This document shows, one piece after another, positions 1-64,000 of a DNA stretch of 64,000 nt; position 1 is the first letter of the stretch, and every line of letters begins with the position of its first letter. The notes below the pieces were generated by a model that did no database searches, was not told where the DNA came from, and saw only the letters and a list, made by a program, of their open reading frames with translations. Source of the stretch: Sminthopsis crassicaudata. Lineage: Eukaryota. The translations under genes and the position numbers were made by a program. Where the stretch lies: assembly GCF_048593235.1 (NCBI RefSeq), contig NC_133622.1, forward strand, positions 16,926,001-16,990,000, written 5' to 3'.

Positions 1-56
1 CTCACATCTGGGCCACTTTAAGCACCTTGGACAGATCCTGCAGACCTCAGGTAAGC
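1..56 (+). other. 3' end of non-coding exon 1 and donor of alpha1
   Basis: CAG|GTAAGC at 50/51, homologous to donors at 16367, 33145 and 49626. Exon 2 starts 3 nt before the ATG, as recalled for SLC34A2. Confidence 0.7.
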
Positions 57-371
57 TTGGCTGGAGTTTGGCGCTCCTTCAGCTGCCCCTAGCCATCGTG
101 GGCCGTCCCTGCTGGCCTTCGCCAGGGAGAAAGCTTTTCTTTTCTCTGCCAGTCATTGAAAGGTTCTCTCTACTTTTTTTTTTCTCCACAAAGCTCTACT
201 TCTTGCTGGCCGAGACCGTACGGGGTATTTTCTAGCATTTCTGGGGAGCACGAAGGGAGGTTTAAAAATTGTAGCCCAATTGCTTTTTGTCCGATCTGAG
301 CGTTCTTTCACCCATCTGTGGGTTTTATAGTAAAACTACTGCAGGGTGGTGTTCCGTTTCATTTTCCAGCT

Positions 372-510
372 CAATTTACCGATGAGGAAACTGAGGCAAA
401 CAGCATTAAGTGACTTGCCCAAGGTCACAAAGCTGGTGGTTGGAACTACATTTGAATTCAGGAAGTTGTCTTCCTGACTCCAGGCCTAGCATTCAATCCA
501 CTGTGGCACC
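372..510 (-). mobile_element. MIR/Mar-type CORE SINE remnant
   Basis: GATGAGGAAACTGAGGC..AAGTGACTTGCCCAAGGTCACA core. Repeated near 16730, 33510 and 49990. Confidence 0.7.
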
Positions 511-826
511 TCCCTACCTCTTTTTTAATCACCAGATTTCTTTTTTTTTTTTCCCTGAGGCAATTGGGGTTTTCACTAATCAGTTTTCACTAATCACTAA
601 ATTTCAGCTTTTGATTCTTTAGGTTTTGAGATTAAAGAAGCACAGGCTATTTATTAGACATCCACATATTTCTCTCTGCTGTCTATTGAGTGGGCAGATT
701 GTGCCCACAGCCCAGATCCCCAGGGATTTCACAAGGTTATCCTGAGGGGGGATCAGGGCTTGTGGGGAAGGGATGGTTGGCTATTTGCTCTCCCTGGAAG
801 GAGGGTTTTTTTCTGAATGGAAGAAT

Positions 827-972
827 GGCAGCTAGGAGGCTCAGTGGATCCAGCACCAGCTCTGAAATCAAGAGGATCTGAGTTCAAATCTGACCTCAGA
901 CACTTAACACTTCCTATCTGTGTGACCCTAGGCAAGTCCCTTAGTCCCAATTGCCTCAGCAGGAAAAAAAAA
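827..972 (+). mobile_element. Older tRNA-derived SINE in intron 1, shared by all gene-bearing monomers
   Basis: GGCAGCTAGG..CAGTGGAT..GAGTTCAAAT..A-tail. Also at 17180-17325, 33971-34117 and 50440-50585. Confidence 0.8.
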
Positions 973-60038: not shown

Positions 60039-60179
60039 TTTTTCCCTGAGGCTGGGGTTAAGTGACTTGCCCAGGGTCACACAGCTAGGAAGTGTTAAGT
60101 GTCTGAAACCAGATTTGAACTGGGGTCCTCCTGAATTCAACGTGGGTGCTCTATCCACTGGGCCACCTAGCTGCCCCTC
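60039..60179 (-). mobile_element. Young SINE (WSINE1-like), gamma2
   Basis: Copy of 26781-26921. Confidence 0.9.
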
Positions 60180-61521
60180 CAGAAAACTTTAAAATTAAAT
60201 CTCAAAAAACACAATATATCTGAGGGTCAAGAGGAGATAAATTAAATCACAACTTTATATACAAATTATTAAAACATTAAAGAAAATAAGATGCCTCAAT
60301 ATTGCACCATGTATATATTCTCATACAATTGATATATATAATAAATGAAACCTATATGGAACATTTTATAGGACACACGACCAATGAAAAAGTATTGTAA
60401 ACAAGTTTACTAATAAAGTTTGAAGTAAACTCCCTATGTATTTGTGGGGTAAACAATAGAAAACACCCATTTTGTTACTGTGACTTTTTCAGTTGTGTCG
60501 CAATTCTCCATGACTCCATTTGGGATTTTCTTGACAGAGATATTGGAGTGGTTTGCCATTTTCTTCTCATGTTCATCTTTTATACTTGTTCGTAAGCATA
60601 CTATAAATACAGAACCTAAGTACCTCTTTGATCTCCTTTACACTTTGTCTTTTTCCATTTGCATTATTCCTGTGATCTGTGTACTTGGTATGCTTTGACA
60701 TGTTTTTGGAAAGACATTGTGCTTGAACTGATTGGTCAAGAAGAATGGATCACAGAAGTTATTTGATTTTTCCCCCCTTAGAGTTCCATGCTCAGATATC
60801 CCTGAAGGATTGTAACTTTTTTTTTTGCTTTTCAAGGAACTTTACTGGAACTTGTTAGTTTGATATTTCAAATTTAATCTTTTCTCTAAAAATAGAAAAA
60901 AAATAACAATCACACAAGACCAAACCCCAAACATTGCTTATTTCCAGCTTCTTTAGAGTGACTGTCAATAGTTGACAGTGTCCTATACAATGGAAAAAAA
61001 ATACTAAACATCCATATGTTTTCTTACCCTTGTATGGAAGAAAGCAATAAGTCATGGGCCGGTTTCCATTCACACACATGCCCATTGTCACCCTCAAGTA
61101 CCAAATCAAAAAATTTCATTACAAACATTTTTGAGCATAATCCTGTTAAGAAAGTTGTGTTTTTCCTAATGAAAAAAGCCACAATTGCATTAGAGAAATA
61201 AGTAATCACTGAATTAAATGATAATTTTACTATGAAAGATTATTTTGATTAAAGCTATAAAAAGTAGTTCATTAAAAACATCAGTACTATAGAACAGAAG
61301 AAGTGTAATTTTTGACAAAAGTTATCTTAATTTGGTATTTATGTAGTTTAAAGGTGCACAGACATTGATATTTAGAGGAACTAGGAAGTTCTTTTCTCAG
61401 TATGAAAAATAAGTTCATTTGATCAAGAAAGAGGCAAGTAAGACACTTTTAAGTCCAAAAAGGAGTTGAAGCTCATCTCAGGAGAACTAGCACTCCTAGA
61501 TTGTTAAAGGGGAGAGGAACT

Positions 61522-61769
61522 GGCTGTGTTTGTTGGTTGACATGTGTAGTCCTTGCTCCTAGGGAGCCGAGGCTGGTGGATCCTTGGAGCCCTGAAGTTC
61601 TAAGGTGTTACAAAGCTCATGAGCCCATCGGGTGTCTCCATTAAGCCTGGCTTCAATAGGATGAGCCTGCAGAAGTGGAAAACCACCATGCCCAAGGAGG
61701 GACACCAGGCTCAGGTGAACAGTGAGTGGCTGTTACACTTCCAATCTGAATGAGATAGGATAACTCACT
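61522..61769 (+). pseudogene. 7SL-derived element (gamma2 copy)
   Basis: Homologous to 28262-28509. Confidence 0.8.
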
Positions 61770-64000
61770 GGTATGGAGGAAGACAGGATAGAAAAAAGAA
61801 GAAAGGAACTTCAGAGATGATAGAGTATCTTCCTTTTTTTTCACTTTCTATTTTGATCAGGACTTACCCTTTATTATAGATGAACAGGAATTCAAACATC
61901 TCCATTTTAGTTAACAGATAGCCAAAGTTGGAGTAATTAAACTCTGACATATCTTTACTTTTAAAAGTTTATTTATTTTTAATATACATTGTTTTATGAA
62001 TTATGTTGAGAGAAAGAATAAAGAAAAAAAAAGCAAAAAGGGAGAGACAGAGACAGAAGGAAAGGGCTTTACAGATGATCCAGTCTGCTCCTAAAAGAAA
62101 GAAAAAAGAATACAGGGAGGGAAGGAAAAGAAGGAAATGAGAGAAAGGAAGGAATTGAGGGAGGGGCTTCATAGATCTTGTCCAGTTCTCTGAATTTATA
62201 AATGAAGAAGCTGACCACCACAAATGAAAAAAACTGCATGAGTTGCCATGATATGTAGCAGAGCTAAAATCGGAATTTTGTTCTTCTGCCTTCTAGTCTA
62301 GTGTCTTTTTCCAACAATATCCTACCTGGAATTGTGATTGTTTTTTGTTTGTTTTGGGTATTTTGGGGACAATAGTGAGCAAGCCACTTGCCCTCAGCTT
62401 CCTCAGCATGGGCCATATCCTATGTTTCAGACACCTATTTGGTTTTCTCTTCTGTCCCTCCTTATTATTTCTCCAGAATTATGGGAATTAATTGACATAA
62501 GATTTGAACTCATGTCTTCTTCATTGTACTTTGCCACCTTGCTTCCCCTTAAATTAGCCATTCTTATTTTTTTGTGTGTTTTATGGACCTTTTGGTCAAT
62601 CTATGTATTCTTTCTCCAAATAATATTTGTAAATAGATAAAACAGAACACATAGGATTACAAAAGAAATTGATTACATTGAAATGTCATAAATCAATAAT
62701 TTATTTTATTTTAAAAATTCACCGACCCAGAGCAAGAACTGCTAGAGAAAAATTAGTGGTGAAATATGAGGCTACTTTCAGTGAAGGAATACAAAACCTT
62801 GTTTTTGTTTTTGTTTTCTGTTTTTTTTTTAGTCAAAATTCATAGCAAAATTTCAGTAGTATGTAAGCTCATTGAAAGAAAGCCTTTTTATTTATTTATT
62901 ATATTTTTAAAACTCATTTGCTTTCATTTGTCATTTTACTTTCATTTACCCAGTGTCTAATAGAGGACTTTGCACATAGCTGATTCTTACTAACTCTTTG
63001 CTGAATAAATGAAAGATAACATGTATAAAACTATGACAACATTTTCATTTCTTTCTTGGGGCCAGTGCTAAATGAAAGGAGATTTACTACTTTCTTTATT
63101 CATTCAACTAATATTTGTCAAGCACCTACCAAGTGCTAACCTACTGTGAGCCCTGCAAGTAACTGAGGCATCAGAGAAAGTAGGTTACATCACTACTAGA
63201 ATCATAGAATTTCAGAGCTGGGAGAAACATTATAAGTCATCTAGTCCCTGTAAGAATCCCCTTTTTAATAACATGAACCTTGCCCAAAGGGCTATAAAAT
63301 CATTAAAACTGGCAAAACCACTAGTAGGCATGAATCCTGAATGAAATTTTTTAGGAGAGAAAAGGAACCTATAAGTTCTACAAAAATATTTTCAGCAGCT
63401 TGTAAAGAGCAGCAACTTTGGAGAAATATACTTAAGGCTCAGTAGGATTGATTTAATCCTACAAGGTGTTAACTTGTAGAAGTATACTAAGTACATGTAA
63501 ACTAGATACCCATTGTCTTCTCAATTCCACTGAGTTAACACCTTGTGTGTAGTATACTTTGGGCTCTAATTTTGGGGGTTCTCACATTCCTAAGAAGTCA
63601 GGGAGGGCATGCCTATCTATGTTCAAAAACAAAGGAATGGGCCTGATGTAGAGAGCCAGAACTTTTGAAAAGTCTACTTAAAAGAAGGTGTTAACTCAGT
63701 GGAATTGATAAGATAAAGGTTATTTACTTTACCTGCACTTAGTATAGTTCTACAAGTTGACACTTGGCAGTAGAATTAAATCACTCATACTGAGCCTTAA
63801 TTATATGTCCCCCAAATTACTGCTCTTTACAGCAGCTCTCTTCTCGGAACAAAAAACTGGACACTGAGGGGATGCCCATCAATTGGGGAATGGATGAATA
63901 AATTGTGTCATGTGATTCTGATAGAATATTATTGCTCTATGAAAAATGATGAGAAGGATGTTTTCAGAAAAACCTGGATAACTGTACACAAATTCAAGCA

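What the first reader, a model, noticed from the sequence alone, without database searches (positions are those of the whole stretch)
1..64000. Gene-scale higher-order repeat: three diverged monomers amplified as one 33.26-kb block
Seen: the anchor CAGTCATGC.CA.CTCTTT recurs at 14307, 23968, 31037, 47568 and 57222 (spacings 9661, 7069, 16531, 9654; the first three sum to 33,261). Monomers differ by roughly 10% (alpha versus beta exon 2: 10 of 112 nt) while corresponding monomers of adjacent units differ by about 0.5-3%. Inference: an old triplication of SLC34A2, three different deletions, then recent unequal crossing-over. This resembles alpha-satellite higher-order structure but is built from a gene locus, and is probably copy-number variable.
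Basis: partly seen in the sequence, partly recalled or inferred. Interest (0 to 1): 0.7.

Follow-up and report, generated by a model that had tools for sequence, protein, structure and literature searches.

The report
Nested tandem duplication of SLC34A2 relics
A 33-kb stretch made of three old, differently truncated copies of a phosphate-transporter gene region has itself been copied head-to-tail in this marsupial genome; it is a clean example of an ordinary process, repeated unequal exchange in a gene cluster.

Summary
The anchor motif sits at all five stated places (0 expected by chance). Window 1-30740 matches 33096-64000 head-to-tail with 1.36% substitutions. Inside each unit, three monomers (alpha 16.3 kb, beta 10.1 kb, gamma 6.6 kb) differ by 7-17%.

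Alpha holds SLC34A2 coding exons 2-12. Beta holds exons 2-3 plus an exon-4/last-exon fusion. Gamma holds no exon. Insertions private to one monomer are shared by both units, so the monomers and their insertions came before the block copy.

New here: divergence between the units forms a staircase, 11% (1-381), 2.3% (441-9780) and 0.77% (9781-30740). I read alpha' as a hybrid made by unequal homologous exchange in intron 1, followed by at least one later exchange. This predicts a further alpha-like head beyond the window end.

The 11% head also argues against an uncollapsed haplotype. Copy number and its variation between animals are therefore untested.

Since the duplication the gene copies show no purifying selection (pN/pS about 1-1.6).

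This is a new member of a known kind: a nested tandem segmental duplication, or megasatellite-like higher-order repeat. The scan had already noted another SLC34A2 duplication about 0.4 Mb upstream.

The parts
1..33095 (+). Unit 1 of the 33-kb block (alpha-beta-gamma). Its left end is cut by the window start.
   Evidence: A conserved CAG|GTAAGC donor at 50 and 33145 sets the phase: window position 1 corresponds to 33096.
33096..64000 (+). Unit 2 (alpha'-beta'-gamma'). It is cut by the window end at the place matching 30740.
   Evidence: 98.5% identity over 28.6 kb, collinear, no N.
1..16317 (+). Alpha monomer: end of the putative non-coding exon 1, SLC34A2 coding exons 2-12, 3' region, and a tail with a GC-rich promoter-like end. 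Alpha' lies at 33096-49576.
16318..26454 (+). Beta monomer: the head matches alpha 1-2510, then a deletion runs to the last exon, followed by the 3' region and tail up to the place matching alpha 15937. Beta' lies at 49577-59712.
26455..33095 (+). Gamma monomer. It matches only alpha 8325-10793 and 12929-16317 and has no exon. Its tail carries the promoter-like region and exon-1 donor that now serve alpha'. Gamma' lies at 59713-64000 (cut).
   Evidence: (no tblastn hit to any exon).
1688..7265 (+). Alpha gene, coding exons 2-12: 1688-1802, 1895-2044, 2452-2580, 3415-3558, 4047-4158, 4509-4704, 5279-5362, 5749-5869, 6145-6312, 6901-7017, 7141-7265. 486 codons are open and every splice site is AG/GT.
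   Evidence: The exons match PDB 9z60/9z64 Slc34a2a residues 62-466 of 646. The last exon is absent.
34833..40534 (+). Alpha' gene with the same 11 exons, also 486 open codons. The donor of exon 8 is GC instead of GT (38632).
   Evidence: Against alpha there are 28 exon differences: 23.5 nonsynonymous and 4.5 synonymous.
18183..19462 (+). Beta gene: exon 2 at 18183-18297, exon 3 at 18390-18554, and a fused exon-4-start/Cys-rich-tail exon at 19101-19462. 212 codons are open. Beta' lies at 51439-52723.
382..500 (+). Interval holding the older exchange point, in intron 1. It matches about 33520-33640 in alpha'. To its left alpha and alpha' differ by 11%; to its right by 2-3%.
9690..9980 (+). Support interval of the second change point. 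It matches about 42972-43262. Divergence is 2.29% on the left and 0.77% on the right.
   Evidence: 2*delta lnL = 110.
13601..15278 (+). Old alpha-beta exchange tract in the tails. It matches beta 23246-23986 and 24928-25894. Divergence is 2.5-4.5%, against 9-12% on either side.
   Evidence: The distance is the same in all four alpha/beta pairings, so the tract is older than the block copy.
10823..12920 (+). Insertion private to alpha and alpha' (44088-46181), absent from beta and gamma. It holds an L1-like fragment at 11154-11602.
   Evidence: The L1 call rests on my own knowledge of ORF2-like translation; Pfam found nothing.
23989..24927 (+). Insertion private to beta and beta' (57238-58186).
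27551..28043 (+). Insertion private to gamma and gamma' (60811-61303). A second one lies at 26770-26921 (60028-60179).
35274..35410 (+). 137-bp piece kept in alpha', beta and beta' but deleted from alpha (between 2128 and 2129). A 43-bp piece at 33221-33263 is likewise missing only from alpha.
14307..14325 (+). Other copies are at 23968, 31037, 47568 and 57222.

Best explanation
This is a real nested tandem segmental duplication. Steps marked 'shown' are seen in the sequence; those marked 'inferred' are my reading.

1. Shown: an older head-to-tail array of SLC34A2-locus monomers existed, each running from one promoter to the next. It lost different parts in different monomers and picked up monomer-private insertions.
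2. Shown: the alpha and beta tails were partly homogenised.
3. Shown as a pattern, inferred as a mechanism: unequal homologous exchange between the head of alpha and the head of the monomer that followed gamma copied the 33.2-kb alpha-beta-gamma block. The two heads were direct repeats about 33 kb apart and about 11% diverged. The exchange lay in intron 1 near position 382-500. It left alpha' as a hybrid, with a foreign head and an alpha body.
4. Same status: a later exchange near 9.8 kb made everything to its right younger.

The result is a higher-order repeat in logic: units about 98.6% alike, built of monomers 83-93% alike. Its mechanism is ordinary unequal crossing-over in a gene cluster.

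The alpha and beta reading frames are still open in both units. They have evolved without detectable constraint since the copy was made. The block most likely has no function of its own.
For: - Periodicity and hierarchy.
- SLC34A2 origin and exon maps.
- Order of events: insertions private to alpha (10823-12920), beta (23989-24927) and gamma (26770-26921, 27551-28043) are each present in both units.
- Hybrid head: alpha and alpha' differ at 45 of 400 sites over 1-381. Private changes lie on both lineages (27 and 16). Beta and beta' differ there at only 3 of 505 sites. Beyond about 440, alpha/alpha' divergence drops to 1-4 differences per 100 nt.
- Second step at 9690-9980: 2.29% versus 0.77%, 2*delta lnL = 110. 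The homologous heads give 2.5% for alpha/alpha' but 0.9% for beta/beta', so the step is historical, not a matter of local mutability.
- Against an artefact: no N. Changes are balanced between units, and ts:tv of about 1-1.3 is seen at both levels. There are unit-private deletions. The monomer junction gamma->alpha' is homologous to alpha->beta. An 11% head cannot be allelic. The laboratory dunnart colony is described as inbred (PMC13408496).
- Neutral drift of the genes.
Against:
- The window shows only 1.92 units and neither flank. The hybrid-head model and the predicted third alpha-like head therefore cannot be checked here.
- Long gene-conversion tracts, or conversion from paralogues outside the window, could produce the same steps without changes in unit number.
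- Exchange between 89%-alike heads is less efficient than between near-identical repeats.
- The species name and the location relative to the intact SLC34A2 genes come from unchecked scan notes.
Confidence: 0.65

Rival explanations
1. Assembly artefact. The two units are the two haplotypes of one alpha-beta-gamma block, wrongly laid in tandem.
For: No read evidence could be obtained. Mean divergence of 1.4% is within what very divergent haplotypes can reach. All ten good holders carry only about 0.6 of the sampled words of 1600-7600, which does not settle whether both versions are present.
Against: - The two heads differ by 11% plus a 43-bp indel, while the bodies differ by 0.8-2.3%. Alleles would not show that staircase.
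- The gamma->alpha' joint is a natural monomer junction homologous to alpha->beta, with the same exon-1 donor.
- There is no gap.
- The colony is reported as inbred.
Confidence: 0.07
2. Exactly two units made by one duplication. The divergence steps come from later long-tract gene conversion, either between the units or from paralogues outside the window, not from further unequal crossovers. No third alpha-like head follows.
For: Short conversion-like tracts do exist here: alpha-beta tails at 13601-15278. 10-20% of unit differences show both states among paralogues. Divergence within the 2.3% part is over-dispersed, with variance 27.8 against a mean of 11.4 per 500 nt.
Against: The younger part is at least 21 kb long and uniform, far longer than usual conversion tracts (my knowledge). 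A donor 11% away would give patches, not an even 2.3%.
Confidence: 0.18
3. The window is a slice of a long, many-unit array (a gene-holding macrosatellite) kept alike by ongoing concerted evolution and perhaps selected for dosage of the alpha and beta products.
For: The window begins and ends inside the repeat. There were at least two exchanges. Both frames are open in both units. The SLC34A2 orthogroup is reported as expanded in the dasyurid ancestor (PMC12866920).
Against: The 11% head suggests unit 1 is the first unit. Units differ by 0.8-2.3%, which is not the near-identity of an actively homogenised array. pN/pS of about 1-1.6 shows no constraint. No run on record as RNA holds the stretch.
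Confidence: 0.1

Closest known systems
Megasatellite / large tandem arrays with kb-scale monomers and higher-order units in the human genome (Warburton et al. 2008, PMC2588610)
   Same: kb-scale monomers of common origin are repeated as multi-monomer blocks. Transposon insertions in single monomers date the steps. Unequal crossing-over is the proposed motor. 53 such large arrays hold genes or repeated exons.
   Different: Here the monomers are whole gene loci of very unequal length (16.3, 10.1 and 6.6 kb). Only about two units are seen. The species is a marsupial.
Alpha-satellite higher-order repeats
   Same: The hierarchy is the same: diverged monomers, much more alike higher-order units, head-to-tail order, and unequal exchange.
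   Different: Monomers are 171 bp against 6.6-16.3 kb. Copies number hundreds to thousands against about 2-3. Alpha-satellite has a centromeric role and equal-length monomers, and neither applies here. Unit divergence here is 0.8-2.3%, with a clear staircase.
Block (multi-gene) tandem duplications by non-allelic homologous recombination in gene clusters, such as the human amylase and MHC class I alpha-block duplicons (my knowledge, not checked here), and the dasyurid ANAPC4-SLC34A2 200-kb duplication about 0.4 Mb upstream (scan note s1-153306, unchecked)
   Same: Older paralogues serve as direct repeats for unequal exchange. That exchange copies several diverged paralogues as one cassette and leaves a hybrid copy at the joint.
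   Different: Here the cassette consists of truncated relics of one transporter gene, and there is no sign of selection on them.

Membership tests
Higher-order repeat (satellite sense) | Head-to-tail monomers of common origin | tested here: met
   Alpha, beta and gamma share collinear 3' and tail segments, K2P 0.07-0.17, all in direct orientation.
Higher-order repeat (satellite sense) | A block of n monomers recurs with identity far above that between monomers | tested here: met
   98.6% between units against 83-93% between monomers.
Higher-order repeat (satellite sense) | Many (3 or more) iterations forming a homogeneous array | tested here: inconclusive
   Only 1.92 units lie in the window. 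The staircase predicts at least part of a third. The flanks could not be read.
Higher-order repeat (satellite sense) | Monomers of about equal length | tested here: not met
   16.3, 10.1 and 6.6 kb.
Tandem segmental duplication by non-allelic homologous recombination | Direct duplicates of at least 1 kb and at least 90% identity, adjacent to each other | tested here: met
   28.6 kb at 98.5%, adjacent, no gap.
Tandem segmental duplication by non-allelic homologous recombination | The joint lies in pre-existing direct repeats and leaves a hybrid paralogue with a switch point | tested here: met
   Head at 11%, then 2-3% beyond about 440. Private changes lie on both lineages.
Tandem segmental duplication by non-allelic homologous recombination | Both copies are present in the genome, by depth or spanning reads | not testable with these tools
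All runs are kept as contigs only.
SLC34 (Na+/Pi cotransporter, Pfam PF02690) gene | Sequence match to the family across both transport repeats | tested here: met
   Alpha exons match Slc34a2a residues 62-466 with E-values from 9e-6 to 4e-22. Single exons match PF02690 at 23-26 bits, below the 29.1 cut-off.
SLC34 (Na+/Pi cotransporter, Pfam PF02690) gene | Complete coding region of a working transporter | tested here: not met
   Alpha lacks the part matching residues about 466-646. In alpha the first-repeat stretch aligned to 'vqs..ts' in Slc34a2a reads QSFITS. Beta keeps only the tails. Gamma has no exon.

The most novel reading that the evidence does not exclude
The block is part of a larger array that is still turning over. 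Its open alpha frame (transporter core without the last exon) and beta frame (N-tail fused to the Cys-rich C-tail) would be expressed, dasyurid-specific proteins amplified for dosage. The excess of amino-acid changes between units would then reflect positive selection rather than decay.
Probability: 0.08. Interest if true: 0.6.

Novelty: new member of a known kind. Interest (0 to 1): 0.3.

Why it matters
The locus records three levels of unequal exchange (11%, 2.3% and 0.77%), with exchange points narrowed to 119 and 291 nt. It shows how old paralogues seed the copying of whole multi-gene cassettes. It also helps explain why SLC34A2-like gene counts look inflated in dasyurid annotations (PMC12866920), because at least four of the models here are truncated relics. 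It does not open a new class of system.

Tried and rejected
This cost the depth, spanning-read and expression tests.
- Independent copies: the search for homologous proteins with the beta fused-exon frame found nothing. That is a blank for proteins of 72-229 aa only. There was therefore no route to other assemblies through the look-up of encoding contigs.
- Rfam at gathering level: no RNA family in the window.
- Pfam on five transposon-like frames: nothing. The L1 naming rests on my own knowledge.
- PDB search of the beta tail: only chance-level hits. Its origin from the SLC34A2 C-tail rests on collinearity with alpha's 3' region and on the Cys-rich make-up.
- Supplement of PMC12866920 for per-species gene counts: not held.
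- The ts:tv of 1.0 between units looked like a possible sign of error. I rejected that, because the old monomer comparisons give 0.94-1.30 too.
- Spliced models: exons were searched one by one by reference. Codon counts across exons were done as bookkeeping inside scripts, and nothing joined was printed.
- The large profile search (search of protein representatives) was not used, because the family was already clear.
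Full report
**Observation**

The anchor pattern occurs at exactly the five stated places, all on the + strand, and in none of 100 shuffles. The window has no N, 39.4% G+C and CpG o/e of 0.15, as expected of a vertebrate.

Self-comparison shows that 2129-30740 equals 35411-64000 at 98.52% over 28.6 kb, and 126-2129 equals 33264-35274 at 96.1%. Every repeat of 300 nt or more is direct. A global alignment of the two units gives 417 substitutions and 44 indel events over 30.7 kb, or 1.36%.

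A conserved CAG|GTAAGC donor at 50, 16367, 33145 and 49626 sets the phase. Window position 1 corresponds to 16318, 33096 and 49577. The window therefore starts and ends inside the repeat and shows 1.92 units.

**Anatomy**

Measured against alpha, the monomers are as follows.
- Alpha is 1-16317.
- Beta is 16318-26454. Its head matches alpha 1-2510, and it then jumps to the last exon, the 3' region and the tail.
- Gamma is 26455-33095. It matches only alpha 8325-10793 and 12929-16317.

K2P distances between monomers are 0.118-0.170 in the 3' region and 0.071-0.094 in the tail. Between units they are 0.004-0.016.

**Gene content**

Exon frames were searched one at a time by reference. They match the solved Slc34a2a chain (PDB 9z60/9z64, 646 aa) over residues 62-466, with E-values from 9e-6 to 4e-22. 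Two exons match Pfam Na_Pi_cotrans just below the cut-off.

Alpha has coding exons 2-12 (1688-7265), all with AG/GT splice sites and 486 open codons. The part matching residues about 466-646 is absent. Alpha' (34833-40534) is the same, except for a GC donor at exon 8.

Beta and beta' have exon 2, exon 3 and an exon in which the start of exon 4 runs into a Cys-rich tail. Each has 212 open codons. Gamma gives no hit to any exon.

Codon counts were bookkeeping inside scripts.

**Order of events**

Insertions private to one monomer are present in both units. They are alpha 10823-12920, beta 23989-24927, and gamma 26770-26921 and 27551-28043. The monomer array, its deletions and these insertions therefore predate the block copy.

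A tract in the alpha and beta tails (13601-15278) is only 2.5-4.5% diverged, against 9-12% beside it. The value is the same in all four alpha/beta pairings, so this exchange is also older than the block copy.

Unit-private changes exist too. A 137-bp piece (35274-35410) and a 43-bp piece (33221-33263) are kept in alpha', beta and beta' and lost only from alpha.

**The staircase (new here)**

- Over 1-381, alpha and alpha' differ at 45 of 400 sites (11%), with private changes on both lineages (27 and 16). Beta and beta' differ there at 3 of 505 sites.
- Beyond about 440 the alpha/alpha' difference falls to 1-4 per 100 nt, with one 100-nt bin at 9.
- A maximum-likelihood change point lies at 9781, with support 9690-9980. 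Divergence is 2.29% to its left and 0.77% to its right, 2*delta lnL = 110.
- The homologous heads give 2.5% for alpha/alpha' but 0.9% for beta/beta'. The step therefore reflects history, not local mutability.

My reading (inference) has two parts. First, an unequal homologous exchange took place in intron 1 between the alpha head and the head of the monomer that followed gamma. It produced alpha' as a hybrid and duplicated the 33.2-kb block. Second, a later misaligned exchange near 9.8 kb renewed everything to the right.

Either route requires a further alpha-like head after gamma', beyond the window. The old array thus had at least four heads.

With usual mammalian rates of 1-2.2e-9 per site per year (my knowledge), the steps are very roughly 2-4, 5-11 and more than 25 million years old.

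**Real or artefact**

Internal evidence favours a real duplication.
- The 11% head with a 43-bp indel cannot be allelic while the bodies differ by 0.8-2.3%.
- The gamma->alpha' joint is a natural monomer junction.
- There is no gap.
- Private changes are balanced between the units.
- ts:tv of about 1 is a regional property, also seen between monomers.
- The laboratory dunnart colony is described as inbred (PMC13408496).

I put the haplotig reading at about 7%.

**Function**

- Alpha versus alpha': 23.5 nonsynonymous and 4.5 synonymous differences. pN/pS is 1.64, not different from neutral (p = 0.28). Exons differ by 1.9% and introns by 2.6%.
- Beta versus beta': 5 nonsynonymous and 1 synonymous.
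- Alpha versus beta in the N-tail: pN/pS 1.08.

Nothing shows constraint since the copy was made. The long-open alpha frame suggests constraint earlier (inference). No run on record as RNA holds the stretch, which does not show silence. The block most likely has no function of its own.

**Context**

Scan notes (unchecked) name the genome as the fat-tailed dunnart. They place a roughly 200-kb ANAPC4-SLC34A2 duplication, with the intact transporter genes, 384-408 kb before this window.

PMC12866920 reports the SLC34A2 orthogroup as expanded in the dasyurid ancestor and did not follow it up. PMC2588610 describes human megasatellites with 3.5-kb monomers in six-monomer higher-order units, and 53 large tandem arrays holding genes or exons, all ascribed to unequal crossing-over.

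**Verdict**

The kind is known.

Noticed in passing
window 38632-38633: The donor of exon 8 is GT in alpha (5363) but GC in alpha'. This is the only splice-site difference between the two alpha genes.
   Followed up: partly
window 15900-16500, 32600-33200, 49150-49760: The monomer tails end in 56-57% G+C stretches, against 39% for the window as a whole. Each is followed by a conserved CAG|GTAAGC donor (50, 16367, 33145, 49626). They look like the promoter and non-coding exon 1 of the next gene. Gamma's tail would then drive alpha'.
   Followed up: partly
window 2264-2321, 18927-18971, 35546-35605, 52184-52232: A (TG)n run in intron 3 has 29, 22.5, 30 and 24.5 copies in alpha, beta, alpha' and beta'.
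   Followed up: no
window 3486-3530 and 36770-36814: In exon 5 the first-repeat stretch aligned to 'vqs..ts' of Slc34a2a reads QSFITS in alpha and QSFLTS in alpha'. The second-repeat QSSS in exon 11 is kept.
   Followed up: partly
window-wide: The transition:transversion ratio is only 0.9-1.3 at both the monomer and the unit level. That is low for a mammal and fits the strong CpG depletion (o/e 0.15).
   Followed up: partly
window 5501-6500 and 801-900: There are local clusters of alpha/alpha' differences: 47 in 1 kb and 9 in 100 nt. They may be short conversion patches from a paralogue outside the window.
   Followed up: no
runs X14, X12, X13, X15: Small runs of organism A hold 0.11-0.15 of the words of 1600-7600. 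A sister run of the same study as X14 holds none.
   Followed up: no
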